From: Chlorokybus atmophyticus
Taxonomy: Eukaryota > Plantae > Mesostigma and Chlorokybus algae
NCBI GenBank assembly: GCA_009103225.1
Contig: RHPI01003599.1
Span: 62,001 to 126,000 of the forward strand
Reading direction: 5' to 3'
Length of the DNA: 64,000 bases
The position numbers were made by a program, and so were the translations under genes. The notes beneath the pieces were generated by a model. The model saw only the letters and a program-made list of their open reading frames with translations. It had not been told where the DNA came from and made no database searches. Of this stretch, positions 19,592 to 56,100 are shown one piece after another; position 1 is the stretch's first letter; every line of letters begins with the position of its first letter.

Positions 19592-21669
19592 CGATGACCA
19601 GGTAGCAGTAGGGTTAGTGATATTATGATATTGCTTGAGATGGTGATTGTAAGCCCAGCACGCTGTTGGAGTGATCAGCTCGCACGTGTGCTATTTCGAC
19701 TCGCACCTATTGCCAAAGTTGATTCTTACTGTCAACAAGCATTCGACGTGATGCAATGAACTCATAGGTCGCGCTGCGTCAAGTCGCATACAATCAGATG
19801 CGTCATTGTGCATAGTGCTGCACTTGTTTCTCTCTCCCTTCCCTCTCCCAGCACTGTGCATAGCGGTGCTGCACTTGTGGGCTCCTACTCGGCTCTGCTG
19901 CTGCGTGTGCAGTGCCCTCAGCCGTACTGTCTTATGTAGTGGCTGCAGCTATGGAAGCAGCATTAGCTGATCGTGGCTACTGCTGCTTGCGTAGCTGCGG
20001 TGGTTGTGATGCCGAAAGGAGTGCTTAGGGTTAGGTACGGCAGCAAAGAGTGTTCGCCTTCACCCTTCACAACAGCGGTTCACTGTAACAGATGTCGCGC
20101 ACAGTCGCACATGCATACGCACACGCACGAATATAAGTGCAGCACATGCATAGCAAACAAGGCGCCCGAAGCCATCCACCTGTTGCCCTATACCAAACAC
20201 CATACAGGAAATGGTTGGGTGTTCCATAGTGGTTCGTGTATATTGGATGATGCCAGCAATGACATGTGCAGCAAGGTAAGGTCAAGGCAACTGGGGGTGG
20301 GTGGTGGGGCGGCAAACCGCTGTTGAACACCTTAGCTCTGCCCATAGACACATTGCTGCGTTATCCGTCCGTATGCAATGACAGTATACAATGTGTATCA
20401 AACGCAATGCGGCCTGTGGGTGCTCTGCATTGTTTGTTTGTTCAATTCGGGGTATGGTACTATGCGGTTATGCTGCATGGCATCATGATGCTGTTAATGC
20501 GTATAGTCTGCACGCCAACCACTACTAAGTAGGCCTACAAAAACAACCAATTACGCGGCTACATTCCAGGGGTATAGTGTAGTTTGCTGCCTGAACCCAC
20601 CACTGCGTTTGTATGCAAGCCTGCCCTCTCATGCTTGCTTTTGCCCCCGTTANNNNNNNNNNNNNNNNNNNNNNNNNNNNNNNNNNNNNNNNNNNNNNNN
20701 NNNNNNNNNNNNNNNNNNNNNNNNNNNNNNNNNNNNNNNNNNNNNNNNNNNNNNNNNNNNNNNNNNNNNNNNNNNNNNNNNNNNNNNNNNNNNNNNNNNN
20801 NNNNNNNNNNNNNNNNNNNNNNNNNNNNNNNNNNNNNNNNNNNNNNNNNNNNNNNNNNNNNNNNNNNNNNNNNNNNNNNNNNNNNNNNNNNNNNNNNNNN
20901 NNNNNNNNNNNNNNNNNNNNNNNNNNNNNNNNNNNNNNNNNNNNNNNNNNNNNNNNNNNNNNNNNNNNNNNNNNNNNNNNNNNNNNNNNNNNNNNNNNNN
21001 NNNNNNNNNNNNNNNNNNNNNNNNNNNNNNNNNNNNNNNNNNNNNNNNNNNNNNNNNNNNNNNNNNNCTCTCTCCCCCTCCCCCTCCCCGAATTTAGCAA
21101 CTTACATCGTCACTCGCCTACCCTTCGTGCTCTCCATCTGATGCTTGCTGTGTGCTGTGTACCAAAAGCAATGCAGTATTCTGTGCGTGTGCGTGGTTGT
21201 GTGCTGCGTGCTGTATGTTCGTAGCTGGGTTTGTGCTCAGCTTGTTTGTGTTTGTGTTTTGTGTTGGCGTGCTCCATTCGTGTGCATTGCCAGCATGAAC
21301 CTACTTGCATAGACAGGCAGATGGCTTGCTTGCAACTCTCAATGGTCAGTCACCTTCGCACCTGCAACCCATGCACTTTGTACATAGTGTACGTCGTAAT
21401 ATGCTTGGCACCTGTGTGTGCGGACAAGGTTCAAATCATCAATTGCATTACTAAGTGTAGAGAGCTTGCCCACTAATCAAAACTGGCCAAACATAGACAT
21501 TGATTCTTGTGCCGTGCGCATGCAGTCTTGGTGGCGGGCAAGCGGCGGCGGCGGCGGCGGCCGTGCGGTTGTTGTCCGTGTGGTCTGGCGGCTGTCTGGG
21601 GTTGTGTGCGCGTGATGGACGATGGATGACGGCAATGTCAACGACTGACATAATCCTTTGCCTCACGCC

Positions 21670-24990: not shown

Positions 24991-26079
24991 NCTGCATGTG
25001 CGGTTGTTGCTAACAGCAAGGCGCTACCACTTTCAACTGCTAAACTCACCGGTTAAGAAAGATGTGTATGCGCGCAGTTGGCATATGCCATCAACGGCAT
25101 GAAAGCACTTGGTTGCTGTTTGCAGTGCAGCCAGAGTGACTGGATGCTTGCTGCGAGCACATCTGTAGGGTAGACATGCGCAGCTAAACGGCATGACGCC
25201 AAAGCTGATTGTCTATGTGTTAGCTCAGACTGTATGTGCTTCTGATCGACTTAGGCTCTGGTTGATTGCCAGCAAGCTGCTGCTGCAAATGTGAAGGTGG
25301 CCGTACGCTGGCCCTGTGACAACTTGTGCGCTTTCAAGTTATGCTGTGCTGAAGTGTGGTTTGTCTGACCATTGCTTGTGTTTGTTGTTGTCAAGTACAA
25401 CTTGCGTTGCTCTGTAGGAAACCAAGTTGTCACCCGATCTTGCAGTTGCTCAACAGCGTAGTTCTTACTGTAGTATGCTGCACTGTGCTCCCTTGCAATC
25501 AAGCAGCGTCTTGCTAGCTTCAATCCCAAGTGTTGCACCATGTTTAAGGTTGTTCTTGAGTGCATACAGCGCAGCTGCACATTTTGCATCACAGTGCAAT
25601 GGCTGTTGCATTTACCGCTCTGCAGTACAGTTCTGCTTGCCCTTGTGCTGTTGCTCGACGTGCTGTTTTACCTGCTATGATCTTGTAGTATACTGAGTGG
25701 TTCTTTGTTTACAGCTGACCATCGACGTGTTGTGAGTCTGCAACTAGAGGTTGCTGCTTGTCTCATTGTCAACAAGGTAAGCCATCCTCGTGTTTATGCT
25801 GGTACAATTTGTGTAGGTTGTCACCATGATGCTATGGTCTGGACTTCCGAGGTGCATGTCAAGGTTATGACATACCAACCCTGGTTGGATCCCTTATGTG
25901 TGTAAACAGGCACCTACAGGCTCTTTGTGTTGCAGCCCCCCCAGCGTATGAGACAGCTTCATCACGCCACATTTACACTACTACGTGGTTGACGGAGTTC
26001 ATCAACTGCCTGCCTTCATGGCTGTCAACACCAAACCCCCACCCAGTAACTCACGTCCCGCCACACGGATCGCCGCTTA

Positions 26080-27962: not shown

Positions 27963-30900
27963 CTAATAGAACGCGAGCCAAGGTGCTCAATAGCGTAAAG
28001 TGTACATCACCTAGTGCATTGTTGCTATCGTTTACAACACCGTGACGCCTAACATCCGCGCAAGCCTTATGTAAGTTCTCGCGTTTTTTGTTGCTTCGCT
28101 TTAGCAATGGGTGACTTGAAGGGTCAAATCTCTTGCCAATAGCTTACGTGTTTATGTACTGAGTACAATGTACTAGCGAGCTGCATGTTAACAAGCATTA
28201 CATGAGCTTGTATCACATATGCATACACATAACTCTGAGACATTTGTATATTGATGCATACAATAACGCCCCCCCCCCCCCCCCCCCCCCCCCNNNNNNN
28301 NNNNNNNNNNNNNNNNNNNNNNNNNNNNNNNNNNNNNNNNNNNNNNNNNNNNNNNNNNNNNNNNNNNNNNNNNNNNNNNNNNNNNNNNNNNNNNNNNNNN
28401 NNNNNNNNNNNNNNNNNNNNNNNNNNNNNNNNNNNNNNNNNNNNNNNNNNNNNNNNNNNNNNNNNNNNNNNNNNNNNNNNNNNNNNNNNNNNNNNNNNNN
28501 NNNNNNNNNNNNNNNNNNNNNNNNNNNNNNNNNNNNNNNNNNNNNNNNNNNNNNNNNNNNNNNNNNNNNNCCCCCCCCCCCCCCCCCCCCCCGCGCACGT
28601 ACGCACGCACACTGTGTAGTATTTTAATTGCTGCCGTATGTGTTTGACCCTTTCTCAAGTTTCACACCTTACACGTGTGACACGAACGTGTACGTTTGTA
28701 ATGGGCCATTACACGTGAGCAAGGGCCCTTCTTGCAGAAAAGCATGTTGCGTTGCAACTTCCTGCACCCAACATGTAGCGCGTGCGCGCGCGCGCACATT
28801 TGTGACACTCGGTGAGTCCAATCGCCATGAAAGAGAAGAGTGCGGAGTGCGAGAAGCGCTCCTAGTATTTGGACCATTTTTGAAGTGGGCGGGAGCCTTG
28901 AACGGTTCCGATAGATGCATCAATCCCGTTGGCAATGGAGTCGCACCGTTAGGTGGGTCGCCAAGTGATGGACTTTGTTGGCCACGCTTGAGCATTAGAT
29001 GCTTATCAGCTGGAGACGCGATATCCATCACGCTTTATAACTGCCTTCGGCTAGCACACAAATAATTTCCAACTCGCGTAGGCCACGTGGTGTACCGCCA
29101 GTATAGCGCTAGCTGCGATGCATGCAGGTCCCTCCTTGCGCATGCCATATCGTGCAGCGCACAATACACAACATGTAGCTGTAAGGACATTGCTCGTGTA
29201 CACACTATCATACGATTGTGTCTTAACGGAGCTGCTTTGATGGAACTTACATTCTACAACAATCTTTTAGGTTGCAATGCATTACAACAGTGTAATGCAA
29301 GACACCTTAAGTTAATCGTGCGCGCACAGTTCCCGCATAATTGCTCGCATCGACGTAAACAATGCGGCACATGCAGCAATTGCAATAACAGCAGATGCCG
29401 AGTGATACCACTCCGAGTGTAGCACACAGTCACGAGCGGATGAATGCACGCATGCGAAACAATGTCATAACTTTGCTTTGCATGCGGTATACTTTCAAAA
29501 GGCAATTCTTGTACAAATACAAGAACTGCCATTCGACTATTGCAAACACATGCATGCAACACCCACGCGCATGGGAGCACATAAACATGTGTGACATAGA
29601 CCTAATTGACAATGCCATTCCGTATTGTATGATTGTATTCGTCACACCGCCTTAAGCTCACATACACGCAAACTTGCAAATGTACACAAATAGAGAGCAC
29701 ATGTGTCTGATGCAAAGCTCACCAATGGTGCAATGGCAGAAGCATTGAGTTGTCCTGTTTACTTCTACTTGTCCTCCCGTGCTATACATATACCATATAC
29801 CTACGGATTGCAGACATTGCATGCTATGCATTGGACCTACTGGACATCCTATACCTGTGTGTACGCGTATGAGGACTGCCAGCGCCGGGCGCCTGTTGCG
29901 AGCGTAAGGTGCTACTACCAGTAGGCCAATAGCTTACTAGCTGTAGCAGTCAGTGCGCAGTGCGCACTGTGTTCAAGCCGCCCACACCCTAGCATTGCGT
30001 ATGCTGCTTGCGGATGTCGAACATCGTCCACATGTCACAGAGACGGCAAGTGTCAACATACATGCATGCATTGAGGGCTTTAAGAACAGTTGTGTGTGGC
30101 CTGCTTGCGTTGCCTGCCTGAAGTGGTATGTGCGCTGCACTGCACTGAATTCAAAACGCTTTAGGGCAAGGTGGTATTGGAGCCTGGTGCGACAGCGGCG
30201 GGGTGGGCGGCGGTGTTGCCAGGACCACGAGGCAGATGCTGCGCTGGCGTCGGCGTAAGCATGTAGGCGCCAATGCGGGCGTGGCGGCGAATGCAAGCTT
30301 AGCAGCAGCGTGGCAGGCCGCAGCCAGCCAGGGGTGACGTGCCGGGAGCAGTACGGTGCGGAGTGCAGTGACGTGGAGGCGTGACATGTGCCTCGGGAGA
30401 TGACGTGCAGGCTCTGTGCACTGTGTGTTGTATGCGGCGTGACAGCGTGCTATGGAACAAGTGTACTCGTCAGCGCGCGACAATGATGACCCTACCGGGA
30501 TGACTGTAGTGGATTTTGGGCTTTTGGTCATCAGGCCCAATCCAAAAGCCAAGTCTCCACCTGAGGCCAGTCAGCCCGGTTCTCCCCGCCGAGTTAGGGA
30601 GGGACAGAGAACAGTGAGAGTGCATGCGCCAATAGGCCTACACATGTCGAGCACACAGCTTGGGGGAAAACGGCTGCTTATTGCACTAAGGCCCATAATA
30701 TAGTAAACGCATAAGTCATGGGCCAGATTGCATGGCATGATGCCAGCTCCACACCATTCTGCGCCGACACTTCGTGGTCCCTGTGCAAGGGCCACATAGT
30801 CCATCATAACATCATGTTAGCATGATTCTCCTGAAGTGTCCGTGTTGACCTACATTTCTTATCTATCATCACTATGTCGCACTGGCTAACAGGATAGCAT

Positions 30901-31608: not shown

Positions 31609-34381
31609 ATGCAGCGCAAGACCCAGCTGGCGGCGTTGCCGCTGCTGGTGGTGACCCTGCTGGCCATTGCGGCCCAGGGAGTGCAGCCTGCTGTTGCTAA
31701 CGATAACACCGCCGGCGCCGTTGTCAAGTCAGTACCGGTCTCATTCACAGCCTTGCATGCTGTCATGTATCATCAGATGGTAGCCCTGTATGACGGTTGC
31801 CGATGCTAGCACACAAGGTGCATATTTGTGTATAGCTTGACATATGCTACTGATTGTCACCATGTGACTGTACCCTGAGACATGCCAATTCTCCTTGCGC
31901 TTCCCTGCTGACCGAGGGTATCCATGTTTGCAGGGGCTGTGTGTATTGCGACACCTGCGATGATGGTAGGCAGCTACACTGAGTGGTGCTGCTTGCAAAC
32001 ATGTTGAGAGTAGTCTGCTCATGTTGACTTGGTGATGTGCGCATACAGGCAAGTTTGATGCAGCGCGGGACAAGCCTCTGGCAGGCGTTGATGTGCAAAT
32101 CACTTGCAAAAACACCGACGGTGACTTGACCTTCCTCACTGTCACTACCGGTTCCGATGGCTGCTACAGGCGTGACGGCGTGCCAACAGTGGAATTGTAC
32201 GCTCAGAAGGGGCAGAAATACGCCTTCTGCAGTGTCAGAGTGCACAAGCCGAAGGGCAAAGCCTGCAGCGCCTTCTCCTCCAAGCGCTGTGGCCAGGCTG
32301 CCGTGTATGCCGGCTCAAATGCACTGCATGACCACAAAGAATACACGGTCAGACATTAAGCTTGTATGTTTGGGTGCACGCTTAGATATGTACATGTATA
32401 TGTAATGTTCCCACACGTGTGTGCGTGTGCGCGACCGCACGCGTGATGTGCCTGAATACACGTGTGCGCGAGACCATACGCGTGTGCACGCGTATCTGTT
32501 GTGTGCTGATTGTCGCTGATTTCACACAGATAGAACAGCCCGCCTTTTGCTTAAGGCCACAGACGCCACCCCGCAGCTGCAACGCCCCTCCACCACCGAA
32601 GGACGAAGATCGCTCTCCTCCGCCAAAGGGTCGCTCCCCTCCCCCGCCAAAGCACCGCTCTCCTCCTCCCCCGAAGCGCAGCTCTCCCCCACCACCCCAG
32701 GCCGAGTCTCCTCCCCCACCCAAGCCCAGCTCTCCCCCACCACCCAAGCCTGAGTCGCCTCCTCCACCAAAGCCCAGCTCTTCCCCACCACCCAAGAACA
32801 AATCCCCGCCTCCACCAAAGCCCAGCTCTCCTCCACCGCCTAAGGCCGAGTCTCCTCCTCCGCCCAAGACTGAGTCTCCCCCACCACCGAAGCCCAGCTC
32901 TCCCCCACCCAAGGCTGAGTCTCCTCCTCCGCCGAAGCCCAGCTCTCCCCCACCACCCAAGGCTGAGTCGCCTCCTCCACCGAAGCCCAACTCTCCGCCA
33001 CCACCCAAGACCGAGTCTCCTCCTCCCCCCAAGCCCAGCTCCCCACCACCCAAGGCCAAGTCGCCTCCCCCACCAAAGCCCAAATCTCCTCCCCCACCCA
33101 AGGCTGAGTCGCCTCCTCCCCCGAAGCCCAGCTCTCCCCCACCACCCAAGGCCAAGTCGCCTCCTCCACCCAATGCTGAGTCTCCCCCACCACCCAAGCC
33201 TCAGTCGCCTCCCCCACCCAAGGCTAAGTCGCCTCCCCCAAAGCCCAACTCTCCGCCACCCAACAACGAGTCTCCTCCTCCTCCGAAACCCAGCTCTCCC
33301 CCACCCAAGGCTGAGTCGCCTCCCCCACCCAAGGCCGAGTCTCCTCCCCCACCCAAGNNNNNNNNNNNNNNNNNNNNNNNNNNNNNNNNNNNNNNNNNNN
33401 NNNNNNNNNNNNNNNNNNNNNNNNNNNNNNNNNNNNNNNNNNNNNNNNNNNNNNNNNNNNNNNNNNNNNNNNNNNNNNNNNNNNNNNNNNNNNNNNNNNN
33501 NNNNNNNNNNNNNNNNNNNNNNNNNNNNNNNNNNNNNNNNNNNNNNNNNNNNNNNNNNNNNNNNNNNNNNNNNNNNNNNNNNNNNNNNNNNNNNNNNNNN
33601 NNNNNNNNNNNNNNNNNNNNNNNNNNNNNNNNNNNNNNNNNNNNNNNNNNNNNNNNNNNNNNNNNNNNNNNNNNNNNNNNNNNNNNNNNNNNNNNNNNNN
33701 NNNNNNNNNNNNNNNNNNNNNNNNNNNNNNNNNNNNNNNNNNNNNNNNNNNNNNNNNNNNNNNNNNNNNNNNNNNNNNNNNNNNNNNNNNNNNNNNNNNN
33801 NNNNNNNNNNNNNNNNNNNNNNNNNNNNNNNNNNNNNNNNNNNNNNNNNNNNNNNNNNNNNNNNNNNNNNNNNNNNNNNNNNNNNNNNNNNNNNNNNNNN
33901 NNNNNNNNNNNNNNNNNNNNNNNNNNNNNNNNNNNNNNNNNNNNNNNNNNNNNNNNNNNNNNNNNNNNNNNNNNNNNNNNNNNNNNNNNNNNNNNNNNNN
34001 NNNNNNNNNNNNNNNNNNNNNNNNNNNAAGGCAACTTTACCTCCTCCACCAAAGGCGGAGTCTCCTCCTCCGCCCAAGGCTAAGTCGCCTCCTCCCCCGA
34101 AGCGCAGCTCTCCCCCACCACCAAAGGCTAAGTCTCCTCCTCCCCCCAAGCCCAGCTCCCCTCCACCACCTAAGGAGTCTCCTCCTCCACCCAAGCCCAG
34201 CTCTCCCCCACCTCGCAAGGAAGAGTCTCCTCCGCCTAAGCGCTCACCTCCTCCCCCAAAATATGACACCAAGTCCCCTCCCCCGAAGTATCGTTCCCCT
34301 CCCCCAAAGGAGGATTCCAAATCCCCTCCGAAATACTATGGTCCACCAGAGGACGGCCATGATCATCATCATGGTCACTAG
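31609..34381 (+). CDS. Secreted Pollen Ole e 1/PAC-domain extensin-like hydroxyproline-rich glycoprotein (4 exons; last exon spans a gap)
   Basis: Signal peptide; VVK|GCVYCDTCDD|GKF..KPLAGVDVQITC..TGSDGCY..CSV..C; then many SPPPPK repeats (KAESPPPPK, KPSSPPPPK) and tail KYRSPPP..KYYGPPEDGHDHHHGH*. Frame across gap 33358-34027 cannot be verified. Confidence 0.88.
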
Positions 34382-39580: not shown

Positions 39581-42495
39581 CTAATCCGTCATCGTTATAC
39601 TCAAGAACGGGTGCTTCAGCGCCTGTGTGGCAGTCGGCCGCATAGACGGCTCATACGTCATGAGCCCAACAATCAGGTTCGCCAAGGCCGCCAAAGCCAA
39701 ATGCTGATTATCGTCCTCATGATGGTCCTGACTAAACTTATGCAGCATTGCTTGCAAGGAGTCCAGCTTCGACACCGCTTCGATGCTCTCGGAAGCAGCT
39801 TCGACGTCCGGCCAGAGTACATTGTATGTGCCGTCGTGGCCGTTGCGTTGGAATGTGGTGCGCCTGCAAGGTCACATGGTGAATCGTGGTATGTGCACGC
39901 GTGTGTTCACGCAGGTGTGAGCATATACGGGGCTAGGTGTGGGTGAGATTGGGTACACACATGCGCGTGCGCGCACACACATACGCACATATGCATGCAT
40001 GCTTGAGTGTGTCTCAAATTTGTAAATACACGTACACTTCAGGTGACGATAACAAGACCATGTGGGGTGGGAAGGGTCCCCGCACGCGCTCCATCATGGC
40101 GAGGTGCTCGGCAACTGTGTCACCGCGCATCATAAACATCACGTCTCCCTGCAGTGCAGACATCCATGTCAGTTGGTTGGCTGGCTGTGTGATGTTACAA
40201 TGCTGCTGCTGCTGTTGTTGTTGATGTCACATCATGCGAGCCAACTTTGCGCTACCGTTAGAAGCTCGTACAGCAGCACCCCTAAGCTCCACATATCGCA
40301 CGGATACGACCACCCCAATCCTGCACATGAATCACACACACCTCAACGCAACAACAACAACAACAATAACAACAACGCTACTTACCGAGCAGTACTTCGG
40401 GGGCGCGGTAGTGGCTTGTGGTCACGATGGGCTCGTGGTACTCGTTGTCGAACGTGGCACTGCCATAGTCGATCAGCTTCACGCGAGTCGAGTGCGGCAT
40501 CCAACGCCGGTCCTCAGAGCTATGACCCTGTGCGCACAATCATCACATGCTTTGCTCTCCCCTCCTTACATGCGTTCGCAAGATGTGCATAAAAGCAGAC
40601 AACATATTGCTCAAGCTTGCCTCCTCTTGAGCGGACGTCTTGAAGTAGCTGTAGTGGAGGGATGTGAGCACGATGTTCTCCGGCTTCAGGTCCGTGTGCA
40701 CCAAACCCAACGCATGCAAGGCTGGCACGCACACACGCATACACAAGCGGGTTTGCTGAAATCATATGACGCCAAGTTGATCGACGTGCTCACATGATGC
40801 TCTCTACTCCTTTACTACCTGCCACCGCGTGCAGAATTTGGCGTGCGTAGTCCTGCACGTAACCCAATGCAAAGCCCCTGTGACCGTTCACGCGAAGAAG
40901 CTCATCAAGGCTCAGCCCGAGCTTCTCAAATACCTGAAACAGTCGCATTGTGAGCTACAACACTCGCACTGCATTGCCGCCTGGCGTGCACAAGCAATTA
41001 TTGTGTCGTACCAGGCACACGCGGCCTTCGTGGAAGAACTTGTCCAGCAGCTCAACCGCCGCACTGCAAACATCAATACTGATTGAAGCCACATTAACGG
41101 ACAAAGCTGCATACAACTGCGTGTCTCATGTTGACATGTGCACGCCCATGTGCGTGCGTAAGCGTGCCAGTCCGCGTGCATGGCAATGTGTGCGTGCGAG
41201 CGTGCGTATGCATATGCACGCGCATGCTTGTGTAAATAATGCACACCTGTTGTTGTCTGGGTCGTAGGACCGCAGATACGCAAGGATGGCGAGCTCGTCG
41301 CGTGCGACGCTGCGGCTTTCTTTGCGGTGTGCGAAGATCTTGACGGCCACGAGCGCATGCGAGCGCCGATCCCAGCACTCCACCACCCTGCCATACGTCC
41401 CTGTGTGCATCCGCATGCATACAAGTATGTGCACAAGAAACAACTGCACTGTTGCTCACACACGCACGCATGCACGCGCACATGTACACACATGTGCACG
41501 TGCACACACGTGCACATGTGGACTCACCTGTCCCCATGATGCGCAGAAACAAGTCTGCAACACAAGCACCATGTCATACACCATGCCAGCCACCAACTAT
41601 ACCACCATGCATGCATGCAGTACTTACATCTCGGTGTGAGGTACTCGCCCGGCACAGCAACGCAGTGGCCCCTATCATCGTCCAGTCGGCACGCTGCTCG
41701 TGAGGCGGCCCATGTTGGAATGTCCTTGTTGAAGTCACGATCAGTAGCTGTTATTTGAGGCAGGCGCGGGCACACCCTGGCCCGCCCTTGCAACCGGTGG
41801 ACCACGCTGTCGTGCTCCACTCCACTCTCGTGCAACCCCTCACCTGATGAATGTTGTTGATAGTTGATGTGAGATGGTTGAAGAGCGCGAGTGTCGGCAT
41901 GCAAGCCGGGTGGGTATCGTGTGCACACACACACATGACTGCTGTGGGCTAAGGATGAAGGAGTTGAAGAGTCACACTTTGCAGCACACTTGCATTGTGA
42001 GGCTAGCTGAATGACAACGCTACGGCTGAAACGCTGGACAACAGCATCACTTGTGAAGGCAATGTGTGCTCAGCAAAAGAACAGACATCACACAGCCAAT
42101 TTTCATAATGGACTGAGTCCATGCCAAATGCAGCCTCCATGCCCACCCTTACCATTGCCACAATTGAGCTGCCTCTCCTCGTCCTTGTGGTCCACCACGA
42201 CATCAGCGTCATACACCACTGGTGAGAGTGAGCCGCTGCAACCATTTGTGCACTGAGCTCCATCTGCCTCTCCTACAGCGCTATACTCGCCCTCGCCCTC
42301 ACCTTGCCAGCTGTCCACTACACCACAGGCGGCGGCGGTCACGTGGGGAGGTACGCCTGCTGGGTTGGCGTGCAAGGTACCGGCGAGCAGGAGCGTAGGG
42401 CTGAGAAGGACGATAGCGAGGAAGAGACACAGGAGAGGCCGCGGCAGGAGGAGCAAGCGCTGGGCCTCCTGCCGCCGCCGCCGCCCCTGGGCCAT
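39581..42495 (-). CDS. LAMMER/CLK (AFC-like) dual-specificity kinase with an atypical hydrophobic N-terminus (11 exons)
   Basis: [20 protein letters not shown]|Y, MGT|[47 protein letters not shown]|[34 protein letters not shown]. Kinase exons are phase-consistent; attachment of exon 1 (42495-42153) is inferred. Confidence 0.9.
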
Positions 42496-43847
42496 TCCCG
42501 GCGCAAAGCATGTGCAGGACAAGTCAAACGCATGTGACAACAGAGACGGTGATCATCATGCACATTCGCAACACTAGTATGAAATGCCTAGAATTATCTG
42601 GAATATAATGCAGTACTTATGTTGTAACTCATATCACTTTTCATAACAATGTCAAATACAGCCTACCGGCTAAGAGATGCTACATGACTTGTATTACACA
42701 GCTTAGCTGTTGTCTTTTCTATAATAATCACATGTGTTTTGAGCAATTACATTCATATATGGTATGCACATGTATGTGTTGCATAATTCAACCAAAAATC
42801 TTCGTAATAACGGATGTCAGCGAACATGAGCAGACACTCTTGTGTTGTATTGTGTCAATATACAAGAAACAAGAACCCGTTGTGATGTGTTGCACGAAGT
42901 GCATCATATACCCATTGGGTTATAGTTGTTTCGTCATGCTACAAAATCTTCAAAGAACTCGCAAACATTTTTTTCAATTTTTCATTAATCATAAAATAGA
43001 ATGTCTCTTTAGGTACAAGTTACTGCATATGATAATTGTATAAGGCACTGCTGCATCCACTATCTATGATTTATGTTTTATGCTCATGCTTTGAAGCGAT
43101 ACTGCGACATAACACGACATTAATACAATTACATGCACACGGTTGGGTTCGCTCAGAAGTTCATTGCCATTTTGAAAACATTCCTTTGATGATGCTCACA
43201 GCTTGATACCCAAACAACCGTTGTGTGACATCATAAAAACGTGCCATGTACAAAACAGACAGACCAACCAAAAGAATCATTGTGTGATGTGTCATATACA
43301 CAGTTACTTGCACGTGGTGCACGTAATTGCGGATTATATGGATGCTTGCATGTCTACCCGGGTGGTGGTAGTGATAGCAGTGAAGATAGAGCAGGTCAGC
43401 CCGGTGGTGAATTACTTGATGACGGTGACTGCACGCACATAGCTTAGGTGCCCTTGCCGCTTAATTGTCTTCTTGTGCGTTGTTTCTGTGGCTCATGCTG
43501 TGCTACTGCGTGCTCAGTTGCTGCGTTTGTGTTCTTTGTGTGCTTTGCGTTTGCCGTACAAGGACAGCCTATGCATGTTGTGTGACAATCACTCCTCTTG
43601 CATGTTCGTTGCATGCGCCTTCATACACCACATTGTGTATACACCATTTGGCTTGTCATGTTGTTACAAGAGACGCCACGCGCGCGGCATGCCAGAATTT
43701 GTTAAGACTGCCATAGCTTACCATACGGCCCACCTACCACGAGCATGAAGGTCGCAAGTAATGGCAGTAGAAGGCTTCTTTCACACCCACTCATGCTGCC
43801 TCAAACGCATTCACACACTCGTTGGCACCTTGGACACTACTATACAC

Positions 43848-46636
43848 TCACTGCAGCATGGTTCCCTTTACTGCATACACGAGACCAGTCCCGCCCCGTT
43901 GCGTTATCAGCCGGTTCAACCGCAGCAGCAGGAGCAGAACCGCCTTGGCTTTGGAACCTGTTTTAAGTGATGGCAATGAGCGACAACAAGCAACACTGCA
44001 ACCAAAAGTGCACACATTCAGTCTGTGAACAGTTGAGTTTGGTTCACCTAAGCCCAGAGATTGCAGCTCCTCCACGGTGACCGTGTCGGCGTCTTTGGCC
44101 CTGTGGCTTCGACCCATGTCGTCAAGAGCAAAGCGCTTCTCCATGATGTAGTCGTTCAAGCGATCTATGGCATCATTCGCAGCCTGTGTGTAGACCAATC
44201 AACATGCTGCGTAATCCTCCCAAACCACACACACAAGACAGAAGTCAAAGCCAATCAAAAGCTCACCTCCAACGACACTTGCGTCCTCAAGAACACTGGC
44301 ACTCCCGCATACTCGCTCTCATCTAATCTATTCGCCAGAGGGCCCAAAGGCAACGCAGCCGTGTTGTCTGCAATGCAACACATGCAAAACATCATGTATT
44401 CCACGTCTCACTCGGCTGCTGTGTGTCAAGTCAGAACAGCATGCTTCGTACCCTGCAGTGTTGAAGCTGGCGTGTCATGCGCCCTGCTGCAGGGAGTGTC
44501 CCAAACCAGCATCCCGCGCACTTTGGCTGTGGCAATGTCTGTCGCCTGATTGCCGTTGCTGCAGCATGCATATGTATAGTCAGATGACCTGGCAGCCAGA
44601 GAGATGCACACACATACGCAAGCGCGCGCGCGCGCACGCGCAGGCAGACACATGTGCGCACGCCCATACGCACGCCCACACTTGCAAGCACACCCATGGG
44701 CGCAATAGCGCGTATGTGCATACCCCNNNNNNNNNNNNNNNNNNNNNNNNNNNNNNNNNNNNNNNNNNNNNNNNNNNNNNNNNNNNNNNNNNNNNNNNNN
44801 NNNNNNNNNNNNNNNNNNNNNNNNNNNNNNNNNNNNNNNNNNNNNNNNNNNNNNNNNNNNNNNNNNNNNNNNNNNNNNNNNNNNNNNNNNNNNNNNNNNN
44901 NNNNNNNNNNNNNNNNNNNNNNNNNNNNNNNNNNNNNNNNNNNNNNNNNNNNNNNNNNNNNNNNNNNNNNNNNNNNNNNNNNNNNNNNNNNNNNNNNNNN
45001 NNNNNNNNNNNNNNNNNNNNNNNNNNNNNNNNNNNNNNNNNNNNNNNNNNNNNNNNNNNNNNNNNNNNNNNNNNNNNNNNNCCCTCCCTATGCACGTGAA
45101 CACGCATACACACTGACGCGCTAAGACGTACTTGTTTTGGTTGCTTGCGGGCGGCGTGTTCTCATCCACCTCCGCCAGGCGAAACGCCACCGGCGGGGTG
45201 GCTTCAAGGGAGGACGCAAAGGAGGAGCCGCCCGTCGACACCGAGTTTCCAACGGACTCCGTCAACATCGACACGCCTCTCGAGCTCGGCGCCAAGCTGG
45301 ACAGAGTCTGAGAGGTCATACCCGAACCTGCACGCAAACACAACAACACATGTAAGCATGTCTAGGTTTATACCAAACTTGCTCGACTCAGAGTCACACC
45401 TTGTGGGTTGGTGCTGATTGCAGCCAGGCTGTATGTGGACAGCCCCAAGTCTTGCAAAGACATGCATATCGGCGACCTGAATAACCAACCAACAACAAAT
45501 GTCATCATCACAAGAACGGCCGTAGCCAACCAACCATACATACACAACTCCCTTCAACATACTTACACGGGGCTGGCGGGTAAGCTGTCATCATGCAATA
45601 TGCCCTCGCGTGCACTTGCCACTATCCTGGCGGACGTGCTCCCGGGCCGTTGATGGTATGATGGAGAAGATGGGCTGTTTGGTGCGTCATCATCGTCTTC
45701 TACTCTGCCTTCAACATTGGCGTGCGAGGAGGATGTGCGTGTCCGCGAGTCAAGTTTGCCCGCGAGTGATCCGGCAGGGGCCTCCCCTCTCCCCGCAGCA
45801 TCGCTGTTATGGCTGTCAAACTCAACTTCGTCTTTGTACTGGCCTGAGACCACGGGGTTGAAACATATGTTTAGCTCTGTCCAAGCGGTTCGTGTGCGTC
45901 CAAACCAAAAGCACACATGCGCACGCGCCCATGCAGCCATGCGCACGCTCACACCAACAAGTGTACTCAATACAACACAAGCACACACAAACACAATCAA
46001 ATGCACGCACGCACGAAAACAAACACGCAAGTACAAACCATACGCGCATGCGTTGTAACATATACACACACCCTCATTGTCACAAGCACTGACACGCATA
46101 TACAGACTCTGAAAGATTCGGTACTTTTTTCATAGCCGTATTGTTCCAGGTGAGTCTCCAGTGCCTCGATCCCCCTGCTGGTTGACTCGTGGAGCGCCCG
46201 GCAGTGCCCAAGCAACTCCTCCATCGAGACGGAACCAACTGTGGCCTGCTCCATGCGCCCAACCTATGCGCAGACACTGACTAAAAAACTCATGCTCACA
46301 CAAATAACATGCGCTAGGGTTTCAGCCTTCAACAACACTCACTCACCATGTCGCCCAGGCTGCCGACGCGCCCGGCCACGTCATTCATCCACACAGAGAA
46401 CTCGGACCCTAAAGACGTTCACGATGGCGTTGACGACTGCGGCCATGGCGGCGGCGGCCACGAGGGCGGCAGTGCGGGCGACAAGGGCAAGGACAAGGAC
46501 AAGGAGAAACAGCAGCATGAGCACCTGGCAGGCGTGGAGCCGGCGTGGCGAGGGACGCCTTCAGCCACCTGCAGCTGCTGTCCAGGTTGGAGCCGAACTC
46601 GCCCAGCTCCCCCAGGAACCGCCGGGCTTTCTTCAT
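43848..46636 (-). CDS. SKA3: Plant-type spindle and kinetochore-associated protein 3 (multi-exon, one gap)
   Basis: N-terminal TVGSVSMEELLGHC..LETHLEQYGY (cf. plant GTVSFEELLGHC); C-terminal ESEYAGVPVFLR..AIDRLN..EELQSLGLG..KAKAVLLLLLRLNRL..LVYAV. Confidence 0.8.
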
Positions 46637-47129: not shown

Positions 47130-50100
47130 ATGGCGCAAGCGCGGCGACCCGCAGCGGGCCGCCCACAAGGCGCTGCTGCTGGCCTGGAGGCCAAAGTAGA
47201 GTAAGTGACAGTGCACGAGACTCCTATATGTGTTGTTTGTTTCACGTTGTTTTGTTGATCGCCTTCGTCTCAGAATGCTCTCACCCCGTGACATGCTTTT
47301 CTTGTTGGTGTTTCGCGTTGCAGATCATGAAATGAACCTCGTTCATTGTCGTCATCATTGTAGTTGCTGTCAGTATATATTGTGGGCTTTTGCGGTTGTT
47401 CTTACTGTAAGTTCTTGCTGATGTTGGTCCTGTTACCGCTGCTGTCGTGCTTGTTGTACTGTTGGTGGTTGGTGCTGCTGTTGGCGTGGTTGGTGGCGGA
47501 GCACTGTTGCTGTTGCTGCTGTTGATGGCGAGCCTTGCACACAAATTATCAAACTTGAGCGCACAGTTGCGTCCAATGCAGTGCTGCTTGTGGTGTCTCC
47601 TGACCTAAGTGCCCGCACTCGCTCTTACGCACATGTGCTGAAACCCTTTCAAGGACACGTGCACACAGGCGCACGCACGCACGCACATGCGCGCACATAC
47701 ACTTGGTTCTTACATCCACATCCACATCCACACCCACACCCACACCCACAGGTCCGCGTGGGGATACGCTGGCGGCCCCGTCCGTTGGCTCGACTCCGAC
47801 ACCTTCCTACACGGCGTGGGCAACGCCGTCCGTCTCGAAAGCGCCTCCACGGGCCGCGAGCGTCACATCTTCAACGACGACACAACCACCACCTCCTCCT
47901 CCAACATCAGCGCCGGCATCGGCACCCTCGACACACTACCACGCAGAAATGGTGGCTCATCCCTCCTCGCGTACGCAGACAAGAACCCGCTCGACCCCGT
48001 CGTACACATCATCGACACATCCACCTCCAACAACGACAACAGCAACAACGTGTTGGCCAAGCTTGATAACGTGGCTCAGCTCGATGTGGCTTGCATGTCT
48101 TTTGAGAAAACAGAAGGCAAACTCATTGCCACCTTGTCCAAGTCACCCGACTACAAGCTCATCATATGGGATTGGGCTTCGCACACTCGCGTGGCGGAGG
48201 TGTCTCTCGCACCCAACACAACAACGTCAACAACGACAGTGTGGGATACATCTGTCCCGGGTGAGGGCGCGGAGAGCGTGTCGTTTTGCCCGAGGGATAC
48301 GAGGAGGCTGTGCACGAGCGGGGGGACGGGAGGGGTGGTGTTGTGGACGCTGGATACGGTGGCGGGAAAGGTGGGTGTGAAAATGTTGGGTGTGGAGTGG
48401 GGATGAGGGAGGTAATGGTATGTTGTGTTGTGTTGTAGAGTGCTGCGCTTGTGCCGACCAGAGTGGATGTGGGGGCATATCGATCGTACAGCCACTGCTG
48501 GGGACCACTAGGAGGTGAGTTTTGCAAGCACAATCCACCAATGGACTGTGCGCGTGCGCGACTGCATGCGTACCAATCCGTTGCGCTGCTGTTTGGTGGG
48601 TCACTTCAGTAGGTCACTCACGCACGCTCTGGCTAACTTTCTTTGTGTCTTTTCAACAGTGTATGTGGGGTGTCTGGGGGGTGAGTTGCTCTTGGTGGAC
48701 GATGCCACATGCAAGGCCGTAACCACACAGCTGACCCACACCCCAACATCCGACCGCCACGAAAGGTATGTCCTCTCCCCCACCCCCCCACCNNNNNNNN
48801 NNNNNNNNNNNNNNNNNNNNNNNNNNNNNNNNNNNNNNNNNNNNNNNNNNNNNNNNNNNNNNNNNNNNNNNNNNNNNNNNNNNNNNNNNNNNNNNNNNNN
48901 NNNNNNNNNNNNNNNNNNNNNNNNNNNNNNNNNNNNNNNNNNNNNNNNNNNNNNNNNNNNNNNNNNNNNNNNNNNNNNNNNNNNNNNNNNNNNNNNNNNN
49001 NNNNNNNNNNNNNNNNNNNNNNNNNNNNNNNNNNNNNNNNNNNNNNNNNNNNNNNNNNNNNNNNNNNNNNNNNNNNNNNNNNNNNNNNNNNNNNNNNNNN
49101 NNNNNNNNNNNNNNNNNNNNNNNNNNNNNNNNNNNNNNNNNNNNNNNNNNNNNNNNNNNNNNNNNNNNNNNNNNNNNNNNNNNNNNNNNNNNNNNNNNNN
49201 NNNNNNNNNNNNNNNNNNNNNNNNNNNNNNNNNNNNNNNNNNNNNNNNNNNNNNNNNNNNNNNNNNNNNNNNNNNNNNNNNNNNNNNNNNNNNNNNNNNN
49301 NNNNNNNNNNNNNNNNNNNNNNNNNNNNNNNNNNNNNNNNNNNNNNNNNNNNNNNNNNNNNNNNNNNNNNNNNNNNNNNNNNNNNNNNNNNNNNNNNNNN
49401 NNNNNNNNNNNNNNNNNNNNNNNNNNNNNNNNNNNNNNNNNNNNNNNNNNNNNNNNNNNNNNNNNNNNNNNNNNNNNNNNNNNNNNNNNNNNNNNNNNNN
49501 NNNNNNNNNNNNNNNNNNNNNNNNNNNNNNNNNNNNNNNNNNNNNNNNNNNNNNNNNNNNNNNNNNNNNNNNNNNNNNNNNNNNNNNNNNNNNNNNNNNN
49601 NNNNNNNNNNNNNNNNNNNNGAGAGGGTGGGAAGGGTGGGTGGGGGTGGGGGTGGGGGTGGTGGGGGTGGGGTGGTGAGGTGTCTTGGGGTTTGTTCAGG
49701 GGGTGCTGCTGGCGCCGAGGGTGTTTGCGGAGATGAAGGCGGCGATACGGTGCATGGCACTGAGCGCAGAGTTCATCATACTCGCAGGCAAGTAGAGTGA
49801 AGTAGGTTGCTCACGCACGTACACGGGCGCGCGCCCACACCCTCTTGTACGCCTTCGCACACGCGCCCGCCGGGTGTTTGCATCGCATACGCGCATGCAA
49901 ACACCCGCCCACACGCACACATACGCTCCAAGGGATACACACACGCACACGCATGCACAGCCTGACACGCTCGCCCGCACCTATACTCAACCACAAACAA
50001 ACATGGTTGCACCCACGCACAGGTGATTCGCCCTTCGTGCGCGTGCTTCGCCCTCCCGCCCGTACCGCCGGCGAGGGCTTCCTCGACCCCGCCTGCGACC

Positions 50101-53100: not shown

Positions 53101-56100
53101 GCTTGCGGTGACGGCGTTCAACTCTGGCCTGTGCGTGCACAACTTCCCGCTGGCATTGCAAGGACGCGCACAGGTCCTCGCCAAGAAGGTAAAGCTGTTC
53201 GCGTTTGCGTGCGGGCGTGTGCGAGCGTGGGTGTGCGTGCATGTGCGTATGCGCATGCACATGCGCATTTGTAATTGCGTGTACGTGTGCACTCGCGCAT
53301 ATGCACATGCAGTGGGTGTGCATGCAACATCCTCGCAACACATTCTGCAAATGCAGATAGTGTTCCTGCGTCAAGTGGAGTCCAAGGAGCTCCGTGCTCG
53401 CCGCCGCGCCGCCCGCGCTCACCGTCTCAACAGCACCATGCCCACCAACACCAACACCAACCTCACCCCTCGCGAGGGCGGCTTCGCGAGCGCGGCCAGC
53501 ACCGCGATGAGTAGCGGAGGGGGCGAGGATGTGGGTAGTCAAGGATTGAGCGAGGGGGAGTATGGGGAGGAGGAGGATGACTTGAGTGATAGCGAGACAA
53601 CATTGAAGACGGCAACGACCAGTGGTAACAGTGGGGGGGATGCGGCGATGGAGATGCTGGACAAGTTGTTGTATAGCCCCTTTGAGCTCAGTGGGGCGAG
53701 ACGGAAAGCCACGCAGGTGGGATGGGAGAGGGGGTGGCACATGTGGGTGCGCACGCATGCGCTGTGTATGTATGTGGGTTTGAGCGTGCGCGCGCTTGCG
53801 CTCGCACGCATGTGTGTGCGGGCGCACCCGTGTGCGTGTGCGTGTTTCTGCTAATGTGTGCACACGCGCATGGGGAAGTGTGGAAATGCGGAAATGTGAC
53901 TGTGTTTTTGTGTGCACGCCCGTGCACATGCGCGTGCGTGTGCACTTTCGTCAACTGCATCACTCACTCTCTCCTACAGGTGCGTTTATTGGCTGAACGA
54001 GTCCGTGCAGAGCGCGCGCGCTTCAACGCGTCGTTCGACGAGGTCCACGCCAAGAAGGTTGCCCTCGTGGACAAGATCGTCGAGAGCAGCGCGCGCGTGG
54101 ACGAGATCCAGCGCGAGCTCGGGATCAACGACAACGTGTTCAGACCCGCCTTGGCCGATTGCGAGGTGGGGTTGTTGTTGGGTTGGGTGGCGGGTTGGGT
54201 GGGGNNNNNNNNNNNNNNNNNNNNNNNNNNNNNNNNNNNNNNNNNNNNNNNNNNNNNNNNNNNNNNNNNNNNNNNNNNNNNNNNNNNNNNNNNNNNNNNN
54301 NNNNNNNNNNNNNNNNNNNNNNNNNNNNNNNNNNNNNNNNNNNNNNNNNNNNNNNNNNNNNNNNNNNNNNNNNNNNNNNNNNNNNNNNNNNNNNNNNNNN
54401 NNNNNNNNNNNNNNNNNNNNNNNNNNNNNNNNNNNNNNNNNNNNNNNNNNNNNNNNNNNNNNNNNNNNNNNNNNNNNNNNNNNNNNNNNNNNNNNNNNNN
54501 NNNNNNNNNNNNNNNNNNNNNNNNNNNNNNNNNNNNNNNNNNNNNNNNNNNNNNNNNNNNNNNNNNNNNNNNNNNNNNNNNGGGGGGTGGGGGGTGGGGA
54601 TGGGGGAGGGTGGGTGATGATGGTGTGGGAGTGGCAGATTGTGGATGCGGCGTTGAGGGTCGAGGACTCGGAAGTGCCGTGCGAAAAGTACGTGTCGCCA
54701 GAGGAGCAGAAAAGGCGACGGGACGCCCAAGCAGAGCAAGAGGCCAGGCTTAGGTATGAATAATGATACAACATCTGCGCACACGCACACCCACCCACCC
54801 ACACGCCCACGTTGCACACAACTCAGGGCGATGCAAGGCGACGACTTAGCTCAACGCGCCCTCAAGGACATGATGGGCAGCAGCGCCAGTACCATGATGT
54901 CCTCTACCTCTTCCACCACCTCCACCTCCACCTCCACCACCTCCACCTCCTCCTCTTCCTCCTTAGACTCCACCCCCCCTCCCCCCAAGCCCACCTGGCT
55001 CCTCGACATGTTGGACTCAACTGGCAAACTCACCGACGACCAGATCAAACAACTCGGTGACGAGAGGGCCAAGCAGTACAAGGAGTGGGAGGGCAAGGAC
55101 AAGGTGTGGGTGGAGGAGAGGGACAAGAGGAGGAAGATGCTGGAGGCGGAGCTGAAGAAGATGAGGGGGGAGGTGGCGGACGGGTGCGGGAGCTTCGATG
55201 AGGGGCTGGCGGGGTTGATGGGGGCGAGGATGGGAGTGGAAGCGGTCACGGGAGGGATGGAAATGAGGATGATAAGGCTCACGGCGGCGCTGTGCGAAGA
55301 TGAAGAACTCACCAAGGAGGTGGGTGAATGCAATCGTTGGCTATTGAAAGTCTGTACACACAGTCACACGCATGCACGCACACCCACGCACGAGCGTGCA
55401 TGGGCCCGCGCGCAGATCCAGACGCATGCACGCACACAACATCCACATGTATGCGCGCGTGTGCATACTCGTGTGCGGGTGCATGCACGCGCACACATAC
55501 CAACATGCCCACTCTACCACTCCCCACCACCAGGAGAGTGCTCTGATTGCCGAGCTCACCGAGCTCCGCAGCAAGAAGTCCAAGTCCACATCCGCACTGG
55601 CCGACTACAGACGCGAGGTACACCTACCTGACCTCAAGACACAACATCTGACACAACATACACATACACACACTCTCTCACCCGCACAGGCGGATGCACT
55701 ACTGAAGCGCTACGAGGCCCTTTTGCAAGACGATCGCCTGTTAGACCGCGCCTTCAAGCGCGACTTCGGCCCGGACTCGGGCAGCGTGGACGCGCTGACA
55801 CTCGAGTCCCTCACGCGCTTGTGGAAGCAACATAAAGGAGGCTCCAACAACAACAACATCAACAGAGGGTCGTCTGCACCCGCTCTCGCCGAGTCGCCTT
55901 CTTCACGTATGTTGGGTGGTGGTCTGATGCAACAACACGCCATCACGTCCCCGCCCTCGTTGGACCCCTTTTGGACTTTGGGTGAACCCGCCAAGGGCGA
56001 TGTGGACATTATCAACAACAACACGCTGAGTGTGGAAGACAAGCCCGAAGGGTGTGACGGGCTTACGTGGGAGAGGTTTATGTTGGCGAGGGGGAAGAAG

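What the first reader, a model, noticed from the sequence alone, without database searches (positions are those of the whole stretch)
39581..42540. LAMMER/CLK kinase with an apparent signal peptide or type II membrane anchor
Seen: an unambiguous LAMMER kinase ([16 protein letters not shown], intact GxGxxG and VAVK). A first exon (42495-42153, GTAAGG donor, phase 1) joins exon 2 (41843, phase 1) in frame across a 309-nt intron. It encodes [43 protein letters not shown] followed by an acidic, Cys-containing linker. The kinase also has DYG for DFG and TTSHYRAPE for the usual STRHYRAPE. Known: LAMMER kinases (CLK/AFC/Doa) are soluble, mostly nuclear SR-protein kinases with disordered, often RS-rich N-termini. 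Inference: basic residues before a ~20-aa hydrophobic stretch suggest N-in topology or a cleaved signal peptide. That would place a CMGC kinase in the secretory pathway or cell wall, or tether it to a membrane, possibly as a repurposed paralogue acting on secreted substrates.
Basis: partly seen in the sequence, partly recalled or inferred. Interest (0 to 1): 0.78.

Follow-up and report, generated by a model that had tools for sequence, protein, structure and literature searches.

The report
Divergent LAMMER kinase with hydrophobic N-terminus
The early-branching green alga Chlorokybus has an intact but very divergent copy of a normally nuclear splicing-factor (LAMMER/CLK) kinase whose first exon adds a signal-peptide-like greasy N-terminus, which would send it to membranes or the secretory pathway if the gene model holds, but I could not obtain RNA proof of the exon join.

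Summary
Every sequence claim checks out. An 11-exon minus-strand gene (42495..39581) encodes a LAMMER/CLK kinase with GxGxx[13 protein letters not shown] and EHLAMMER intact, DYG for DFG and TTSHYRAPE. Exon 1 joins exon 2 in phase 1 across a 309-nt GT-AG intron.

The join is not new. It is identical to the reference Chlorokybus model Chrsp75S09196 (P0001, 553 aa), whose hydrophobic N-terminus nobody seems to have remarked on.

- **The exon.** Exon 1 looks coding: open only in this frame, coding-type GC periodicity, and placed at the sharp 5' edge of the GC-rich gene body. Exon 2 has no in-frame ATG.
- **The N-terminus.** Five Arg are followed by a Leu-rich stretch (Kyte-Doolittle 19-residue mean 2.54). 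This is the highest among 120 closest relatives (median 0.06). There is no second membrane segment. A roughly 90-residue acidic, disordered linker follows.
- **Relatives.** A HMMER scan of 1.84 billion representatives with exon 1 found only P0001 itself and one bacterial repeat protein judged a chance match.
- **The kinase.** Its terminal branch is 4.26 against a median of 0.2, and 35 of 136 near-invariant AFC positions are changed.

Not obtained: RNA junction reads, SignalP, and a canonical Chlorokybus copy.

The parts
42153..42495 (-). Exon 1, the first coding exon (114 codons plus 1 nt). It encodes the basic n-region, the hydrophobic segment and the acidic Cys-containing linker.
   Evidence: The ATG at 42495 has G at -3 and +4, and the donor is GTAAGG. 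GC by codon position is 0.75/0.48/0.69, as in the kinase exons. It is the N-terminus of reference protein P0001.
42379..42456 (-). Codons 14-39: a Leu-rich hydrophobic segment, candidate signal-peptide h-region or signal anchor. It follows residues 1-13, which hold 5 Arg.
   Evidence: The Kyte-Doolittle 19-residue mean peaks at 2.5. This is the highest N-terminal value among 120 relatives. AlphaFold2 predicts helices at 2-15 and 19-31.
41844..42152 (-). Intron 1, 309 nt, GT-AG.
   Evidence: GC is 0.50, like the other introns (0.42-0.53). It holds in-frame stops and no assembly gap.
41628..41843 (-). Exon 2: the rest of the N-terminal extension. It ends with the LAMMER-type DDxxGH...RY lead-in to the kinase domain and has no in-frame ATG.
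   Evidence: Translation is. Its end aligns to CLK2 and plant AFCs.
41528..41554 (-). Exon 3 (27 nt): beta-1 strand and the start of the Gly-loop.
41247..41400 (-). Exon 4: rest of the Gly-loop, VAVK (41350-41339) and the alpha-C glutamate.
   Evidence: Pfam Pkinase matches this piece.
41012..41063 (-). Exon 5.
40819..40933 (-). Exon 6.
40621..40721 (-). Exon 7 with HTDLKPEN (40698-40675). In my model it ends at a GC donor (GAG|GCAAGC). The reference annotation extends it to 40570.
   Evidence: The 17 extra annotated residues have no counterpart in the other 119 sequences of the alignment or in CLK2.
40386..40527 (-). Exon 8: DYG (40470-40462) and the activation segment with TTSHYRAPE.
   Evidence: On its own this piece matches only CLK1-4, PfLammer and LAMMER-like kinases in the PDB.
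40256..40320 (-). Exon 9.
40036..40148 (-). Exon 10 with EHLAMMER (40109-40086).
39581..39863 (-). Exon 11: the C-lobe end and the TAG stop (39583-39581).
42496..43250 (-). AT-rich upstream region, the presumed promoter and 5' leader. Out-of-frame upstream ATGs lie at 42533 and 42511 in weak context.
   Evidence: GC falls from 0.68 (42250-42499) to 0.34-0.38. The upstream ATGs are listed.

Best explanation
This is a lineage-specific, fast-evolving paralogue of the LAMMER/CLK (plant AFC) kinases in Chlorokybus.

- **Kinase:** every catalytic residue is kept (Gly-loop, VAVK Lys, alpha-C Glu, HTD Asp, Asn, and the Asp of DYG), together with the EHLAMMER signature. The kinase has drifted far from the otherwise very conserved green-lineage AFCs.
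- **N-terminus:** the first coding exon replaces the usual basic, nuclear-type N-terminus. It supplies five arginines, a 20-26 residue Leu-rich helix and an acidic, disordered, Cys-containing linker.
- **Most likely behaviour (inferred, not shown):** the signal-recognition particle reads the N-terminus as an ER signal, either a cleaved signal peptide or an uncleaved type II anchor. Because there is no second membrane segment and the positive charge sits on the N-side, the linker and kinase would face the lumen or cell exterior. The protein would be removed from the nuclear SR-protein pool.

Shown here: the gene structure, family membership, the hydrophobic N-terminus, its uniqueness among the relatives examined, and the divergence of the kinase. 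Inferred: that exon 1 is on the mRNA, the targeting, the topology, and activity.
For: - **Gene model:** it is consistent in phase, with a CDS of 1611 nt and canonical splice sites.
- **Annotation:** the same E1-E2 join is in the reference protein P0001, Chrsp75S09196. That annotation was built with MAKER using transcript evidence, and 9,066 of 9,300 CDS were reported as transcript-supported.
- **Exon 1 as coding sequence:** it has coding-type GC periodicity in the model frame only. It sits at the abrupt GC boundary of the gene.
- **Exon 2:** it carries the conserved LAMMER lead-in but no ATG, and the frame is closed upstream.
- **N-terminus:** hydrophobicity is 2.54 against a median of 0.06 in relatives. 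No other segment before the kinase approaches 1.6.
- **Structure model:** AlphaFold2 gives an N-terminal helix, a disordered stretch at 33-123 and a confident kinase domain.
- **Family:** CLK2 is the best solved match at 2.4e-65.
- **Divergence:** the terminal branch is 4.26 against a median of 0.2. 35 of 136 near-invariant columns are changed, against a median of 0 and a maximum of 8 in the others.
- **RNA hint:** a 2021 run, probably RNA, holds 0.38 of the locus words, roughly the exon share.
Against: - No junction or 5'-end reads were obtained.
- The annotation is not independent proof. Its 42-nt intron at 40569-40528 looks like an ab initio compromise, so this model may lack transcript support.
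- No transcript-derived protein of this gene is in the protein collection.
- No orthologue shares the N-terminus, so selection on it cannot be tested.
- Two out-of-frame upstream ATGs (42533, 42511) precede the start if the leader is long.
- The coding sequence of the hydrophobic stretch is a CT-rich tract, a composition also common in plant 5' leaders.
- No CMGC kinase is known to work in the secretory lumen. This rests on my own knowledge.
- The best candidate cleavage sites have Leu at -3, so cleavage is uncertain.
Confidence: 0.5

Rival explanations
1. Gene-model artefact. Exon 1 is not part of the kinase mRNA: it is a separate small ORF, a 5' leader or a mis-join. The kinase would then start from an unrecognised exon or a non-AUG codon, so there would be no signal-bearing kinase.
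For: - No read evidence was obtained.
- The annotation contains an implausibly short 42-nt intron elsewhere in this gene, which hints at ab initio modelling.
- The exon 1 peptide has no relatives.
- The hydrophobic stretch is encoded by a CT-rich tract.
- If intron 1 is retained, the ORF ends at 42103 after 130 codons from the ATG at 42495; one search lists this frame as a 145-aa ORF from the upstream TTG at 42540.
Against: - Exon 2 is clearly coding, because it holds the conserved LAMMER lead-in. It has no in-frame ATG and its frame is closed upstream.
- Exon 1 is the only nearby ATG exon and it is in the right phase. It is open only in that frame and shows coding GC periodicity.
- No AG dinucleotide lies between the upstream stop and the ATG, so exon 1 is not an internal exon of another gene.
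- GC drops sharply just upstream of exon 1, as expected for a first exon.
- Intron 1 has the same GC as the other introns.
Confidence: 0.18
2. Exon 1 is real, but the hydrophobic N-terminus tethers the protein with the kinase still facing the cytosol or nucleoplasm. It could be an N-out/C-in reverse signal anchor in the ER or nuclear envelope. Alternatively it could be a signal anchor of the mitochondrial or plastid outer membrane, or part of a bipartite mitochondrial presequence. The kinase would then be a membrane-localised cytoplasmic LAMMER kinase rather than a secreted one.
For: - The hydrophobic run is long (20-26 residues) and Leu-rich. From my own knowledge of signal-anchor studies, this can favour translocation of the N-terminus despite flanking charge.
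- A cytosol-facing kinase needs no new biochemistry.
- The linker is disordered, like ordinary CLK N-termini.
Against: - Five Arg precede the segment and there is no basic residue in the 15 residues after it. The positive-inside rule therefore predicts N-in.
- Outer-membrane signal anchors are usually moderately hydrophobic, with the basic residues on the C-terminal flank (my own knowledge).
- The four contiguous Arg and Glu10 do not form an amphipathic presequence.
Confidence: 0.2
3. This is a decaying or neutrally drifting duplicate. The gene is a redundant LAMMER copy under relaxed constraint that picked up a chance hydrophobic first exon, and the protein has no specific function.
For: - The terminal branch is extremely long and many invariant positions are replaced, including DFG to DYG and the QTHEN block.
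- The N-terminus is an orphan.
- No near-identical transcript-derived proteins are in the collection.
Against: - All 11 exons are open with good splice sites.
- Every catalytic residue and the EHLAMMER motif are retained.
- AlphaFold2 models the kinase with pLDDT mostly above 85.
- A run that is probably RNA holds about the exon share of the words.
Confidence: 0.12

Closest known systems
Plant and green-algal AFC1/2/3 and animal CLK1-4 (LAMMER kinases, CMGC group)
   Same: - The kinase fold and the EHLAMMER signature.
- HTDLKPEN and the DDxxGH...RY lead-in.
- The CLK-type insertion between the catalytic loop and DFG.
- A disordered region before the kinase.
- The best PDB matches are CLK2 and CLK1.
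   Different: - A basic-plus-hydrophobic, signal-like N-terminus replaces the KRxR/RS-type nuclear N-terminus.
- There is only 1 RS/SR dipeptide in residues 1-186.
- DYG replaces DFG, and TTSH replaces STRH.
- 35 of 136 near-invariant green-lineage positions are changed.
- Identity to any relative is only 41-46%.
Secretory-pathway kinases (Four-jointed, Fam20C, VLK/PKDCC) and secreted parasite kinases (ROPK, FIKK)
   Same: The predicted architecture is the same: an N-terminal signal or type II anchor followed directly by a kinase domain, with no second membrane segment. This comparison rests on my own knowledge; one search lists reviews of secreted parasite kinases.
   Different: Those are non-CMGC families specialised for the lumen or for host cells. 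No homology to them was found here. No LAMMER or CMGC member of this kind turned up in the literature searches.
Receptor-like kinases (signal peptide, ectodomain, TM, cytosolic kinase)
   Same: An N-terminal signal-like sequence and a C-terminal Ser/Thr kinase.
   Different: There is no second hydrophobic segment between residue 44 and the kinase, where the Kyte-Doolittle 19-residue mean stays at or below about 0.7. There is no folded ectodomain, since residues 33-123 have pLDDT below 50. The kinase is CMGC, not RLK/Pelle.

Membership tests
LAMMER/CLK (AFC) kinases | EHLAMMER(I/V)LGP signature ahead of helix G | tested here: met
   [12 protein letters not shown] is encoded at 40109-40086 and onward. 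E436-M441 are invariant across the 47-sequence alignment.
LAMMER/CLK (AFC) kinases | Closest solved or annotated relatives are CLK/AFC rather than DYRK, SRPK or PRP4 | tested here: met
   CLK2 scores 2.4e-65 and CLK1 4.6e-64 over the whole domain, while DYRK2 matches only the N-lobe at 3e-47. The named top database hits are mostly annotated AFC1-3, CMGC-CLK or dual-specificity kinase; many are hypothetical or unnamed.
LAMMER/CLK (AFC) kinases | Complete catalytic apparatus (GxGxxG, VAxK, alpha-C Glu, HxD...N, DFG, APE) | tested here: met
   All catalytic residues are present. DFG reads DYG, with the Asp kept and Phe changed to Tyr. Activity itself was not tested.
LAMMER/CLK (AFC) kinases | Disordered, basic/RS-rich N-terminal region with nuclear targeting | tested here: not met
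   The region is disordered (pLDDT below 50 for residues 33-123). However it is acidic (net charge -11) with only one RS/SR dipeptide, and it begins with a hydrophobic helix. The conserved KRxR of plant AFCs has no clear counterpart.
LAMMER/CLK (AFC) kinases | Orthology to the conserved green-lineage AFC clade | tested here: inconclusive
   The terminal branch is 4.26 against a median of 0.2, and no supported clade holds the protein. There was no outgroup, and the canonical Chlorokybus copy was not found.
ER signal peptide / signal anchor | Positively charged n-region followed by a hydrophobic h-region at the extreme N-terminus | tested here: met
   Residues 1-13 hold 5 Arg and 1 Glu. Residues 20-39 are hydrophobic, with a Kyte-Doolittle 19-residue mean of 2.5.
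ER signal peptide / signal anchor | c-region with small residues at -1 and -3 (cleavage site) | tested here: inconclusive
   The candidate sites after A38, G39 and A43 all have Leu at -3. Cleaved and anchored forms cannot be told apart by eye.
ER signal peptide / signal anchor | Call by a trained predictor (SignalP, DeepTMHMM, TargetP) or experimental translocation | not testable with these tools
Expressed, correctly spliced gene | RNA reads across the 42153>41843 junction | not testable with these tools
Only indirect hints remain.

The most novel reading that the evidence does not exclude
A catalytically competent CMGC/LAMMER kinase is co-translationally imported into the ER of an early-diverging streptophyte. 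It would work in the secretory lumen, at the cell surface or in the wall. That would be the first CMGC-group secretory-pathway kinase, created by grafting a signal exon onto a duplicated splicing-factor kinase.
Probability: 0.25. Interest if true: 0.8.

Novelty: new variant of a known kind. Interest (0 to 1): 0.42.

Why it matters
LAMMER/CLK kinases are described across eukaryotes as soluble nuclear or cytoplasmic regulators of SR proteins and temperature-dependent splicing, built from a kinase domain and a disordered N-terminus (PMC12795684). A member that enters the ER would be a new route by which a core nuclear kinase is re-used. It would also add a CMGC kinase to the short list of luminal or extracellular kinases.

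It would be a compact example of neofunctionalisation by first-exon replacement in a lineage close to the root of the streptophytes. If the join or the targeting fails, the gene is simply an odd, fast-evolving AFC paralogue of local interest.

Either way the reference model needs a check. Its 42-nt intron is probably wrong.

Tried and rejected
- **Read laying.** Only local scripts read the window file, for a GC profile, an N-run scan and as the target of a self-BLAST with exon 1 as query.
- **Word searches.** Exon 1 (candidates of 63-200 aa) and P0001:90-265 (candidates of 97-308 aa) were used to look for transcript-derived fragments spanning the junction. Neither found anything. The full P0001 search found no near-identical Logan or TSA protein. 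These blanks say little.
- **The look-up of encoding contigs on P0001.** The protein is not on record.
- **ESM Atlas on residues 1-186.** Scores were at or below 0.77, so nothing usable came of it. Pfam and NCBIfam found nothing on the N-terminus.
- **P0002.** This bacterial repeat protein was the only other HMMER hit to exon 1. I rejected it as a chance or compositional match summed over about 10 repeats.
- **Alternative reading frames of exon 1 from the upstream ATGs.** The 42511 frame stops at 42299 and cannot join exon 2 in phase, so it was rejected.
- **Thylakoid Tat-type signal (RR plus h-region).** Rejected, because no stromal transit peptide precedes it.
- **Canonical Chlorokybus AFC.** It was not found by the findings index or by the paper searches.
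- **Share of words in run X1.** The value of 0.38 lies between what I expect with exon 1 (about 0.39-0.45) and without it (about 0.30-0.34), depending on assumptions. I treat it as inconclusive.
Full report
**Observation.** On the minus strand I rebuilt the gene from the raw sequence.
- There are eleven exons: 42495-42153, 41843-41628, 41554-41528, 41400-41247, 41063-41012, 40933-40819, 40721-40621, 40527-40386, 40320-40256, 40148-40036 and 39863-39581.
- Their phases fit, and the CDS is 1611 nt (536 codons plus TAG).
- Exon 1 starts at an ATG with G at -3 and +4. It ends in phase 1 at a GTAAGG donor.
- Exon 2 starts in phase 1 after a CAG acceptor, 309 nt downstream.

**Organism and prior annotation.**
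- Earlier notes of this scan name the genome as Chlorokybus.
- I confirmed this independently with a HMMER scan of 1.84 billion representative proteins, using the 114-residue exon 1 peptide as query. It returned one true hit, P0001 (553 aa, 100% identical over residues 1-114).
- The collection labels P0001 as EukProt EP00898 Chlorokybus atmophyticus, jgi/Chlat1/8084/Chrsp75S09196.
The gene and the join are therefore already in the reference gene set.
- What is not in the literature I could search is any remark on the N-terminus.
- That annotation came from MAKER combining AUGUSTUS, GeneMark, homology and assembled transcripts. The authors report 9,066 of 9,300 CDS as transcript-supported. This is supportive, but it is not junction-level proof for this gene.

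**Is exon 1 really the first coding exon?** No junction reads could be had.
- The look-up of sequencing runs gave one holder, X1, with 0.38 of the sampled words. That is close to the exon share of the stretch.
- I worked beside those places afterwards and sent none of their letters to any search tool.

The sequence itself argues for the join.
- Exon 2 ends with the conserved LAMMER lead-in (DDxxGH...RY), which aligns to CLK2 and to plant AFCs. It is therefore translated.
- Exon 2 has no in-frame ATG, and its frame is closed by a stop about 200 nt upstream.
- Exon 1 is open for all 114 codons only in the frame that splices in phase. The other two frames stop after 64-74 codons.
- GC by codon position in exon 1 is 0.75/0.48/0.69, the pattern of the kinase exons.
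- There is no AG dinucleotide between the upstream stop and the ATG, so exon 1 cannot be an internal exon.
- GC falls from 0.68 in 42250-42499 to 0.34-0.38 for the next ~750 nt upstream, so exon 1 lies at the 5' edge of the gene body.
- Intron 1 has the GC content of the other introns and contains no assembly gap.

There are caveats.
- Out-of-frame ATGs lie at 42533 and 42511, both in weak context.
- A second good donor (AAG|GTGAGG, exon end 42303) is also in phase with exon 2. Using it would remove 50 linker residues but keep the hydrophobic N-terminus.
- The hydrophobic stretch is encoded by a CT-rich tract.
- I put the chance that exon 1 heads the kinase mRNA at about 0.8.

**The N-terminus.**
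- Residues 1-13 hold five Arg and one Glu.
- Residues 14-39 are Leu-rich. The Kyte-Doolittle 19-residue mean peaks at 2.5, well above the usual 1.6 membrane threshold.
- The 15 residues after the segment carry no Lys or Arg. Residues 44-186 have net charge -11, seven Cys and only one RS/SR dipeptide.
- No second hydrophobic segment precedes the kinase.
- AlphaFold2, run with 46 homologues, gives helices at 2-15 and 19-31 and pLDDT below 50 for residues 33-123. The kinase domain from about residue 170 is confidently modelled.
- Among the 120 closest database relatives, P0001 has the most hydrophobic pre-kinase region, 2.54 against a median of 0.06.
- Only four others exceed 1.6. Three are volvocine models with a VPVPL-type start, no basic n-region and an internal Met.
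- Pfam, NCBIfam, the ESM Atlas and the HMMER scan find no relative of residues 1-186.
- By the positive-inside rule (established knowledge) the N-terminus should stay cytosolic and the rest should be translocated. That gives a cleaved signal peptide or a type II anchor, with the kinase luminal.
- The candidate cleavage sites after A38, G39 and A43 all have Leu at -3, so cleavage is open. A trained predictor was not available.

**The kinase.**
- Piece by piece and as a whole it is a LAMMER kinase. Exon 8 alone hits only CLK1-4, PfLammer and LAMMER-like kinases in the PDB.
- P0001 matches CLK2 at 2.4e-65, ahead of PfLammer and well ahead of DYRK2, which matches only the N-lobe.
- It is, however, far from its kin. 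The best non-self hit is 41-44% identical, and the named hits are mostly AFC or CLK-type.
- In a 39-sequence tree its terminal branch is 4.26 substitutions per site, against a median of 0.2.
- It differs at 35 of 136 columns that are at least 97% identical in the other 119 sequences. The others differ at a median of 0 and at most 8.
- The changed positions include DFG to DYG, STRH to TTSH and the LFQTHENL block before EHLAMMER.
- All catalytic residues are kept.
- This is what a neofunctionalised paralogue looks like. It could also be a drifting duplicate.
- I could not show that a canonical AFC exists elsewhere in the genome. The conservation of AFCs across the green lineage makes one likely, but that is inference.
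- A recent survey reports a single CLK in chlorophytes. It describes all CLKs as a kinase plus a disordered N-terminus and does not use the words membrane, transmembrane or signal peptide.

**A flaw in the reference model.**
- P0001 extends exon 7 to 40570 and uses a 42-nt intron (40569-40528). This adds 17 residues.
- Those residues have no counterpart in the other 119 sequences of the alignment or in CLK2, and they are modelled at low confidence.
- A GC-AG intron of 93 nt (GAG|GCAAGC ... CAG) removes them and keeps the frame. All other introns of the gene are 65-309 nt.
- I think the GC-AG version is right, but only reads can decide.

**Verdict.**
- The sequence observation is right, and the join is the annotated one.
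- The feature is real, unusual for the family and lineage-specific.
- Its meaning rests on two untested steps: the junction in RNA, and the targeting.
- My best reading, at confidence about 0.5, is an ER-targeted, derived LAMMER paralogue.
- The rivals are a model artefact (0.18), a membrane tether with a cytosolic kinase (0.20) and a decaying duplicate (0.12).
- I class it as a new variant of a known kind, of moderate interest until RNA and localisation data exist.

- All whole-protein work used P0001, a database protein returned by a tool.

Noticed in passing
window 40528-40620 (minus strand): The reference model (P0001) uses a 42-nt GT-AG intron (40569-40528). This adds 17 residues with no counterpart in the other 119 sequences of the alignment. 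A 93-nt GC-AG intron (donor GAG|GCAAGC at 40620) fits the family alignment and the intron size range of the gene better.
   Followed up: partly
window 42303 (minus strand): A second strong donor (AAG|GTGAGG) lies inside exon 1 and is also in phase with exon 2. Using it would delete 50 residues of the acidic linker but keep the hydrophobic N-terminus. It may be an alternative isoform.
   Followed up: no
window 42511 and 42533 (minus strand): Two out-of-frame upstream ATGs in weak context open 70- and 64-codon ORFs that overlap the main start. They would act as overlapping uORFs if the 5' leader is long.
   Followed up: partly
P0020 (Gonium), P0064 (Volvox reticuliferus), P0036 (Astrephomene): Three volvocine LAMMER models share a hydrophobic VPVPL-type N-terminus without a basic n-region, followed by an internal Met-Pro. 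They may be mis-called starts or a conserved upstream element.
   Followed up: no
window 41401-41527 and other introns of the gene: The introns are full of CA/TG-rich low-complexity strings of the GTGTGCACGTGCACATG kind. Places 41478-41518 tripped the reads tool's filter and were not sent to any search afterwards.
   Followed up: no
window 20653-21067, 28294-28570, 33358-34027, 44727-45081, 48793-49620, 54205-54581: These are assembly gaps (runs of N). There is also a single isolated N at 24991. None lies inside the kinase gene. The nearest gap is about 2.2 kb upstream of exon 1, inside the neighbouring GC-rich region.
   Followed up: yes
P0002 (830 aa, source not known): This protein is made of about 10 near-identical repeats of roughly 78 residues. 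It was the only other HMMER hit to exon 1, covering residues 64-100 at 35% identity. I judged it a chance match summed over repeats.
   Followed up: partly
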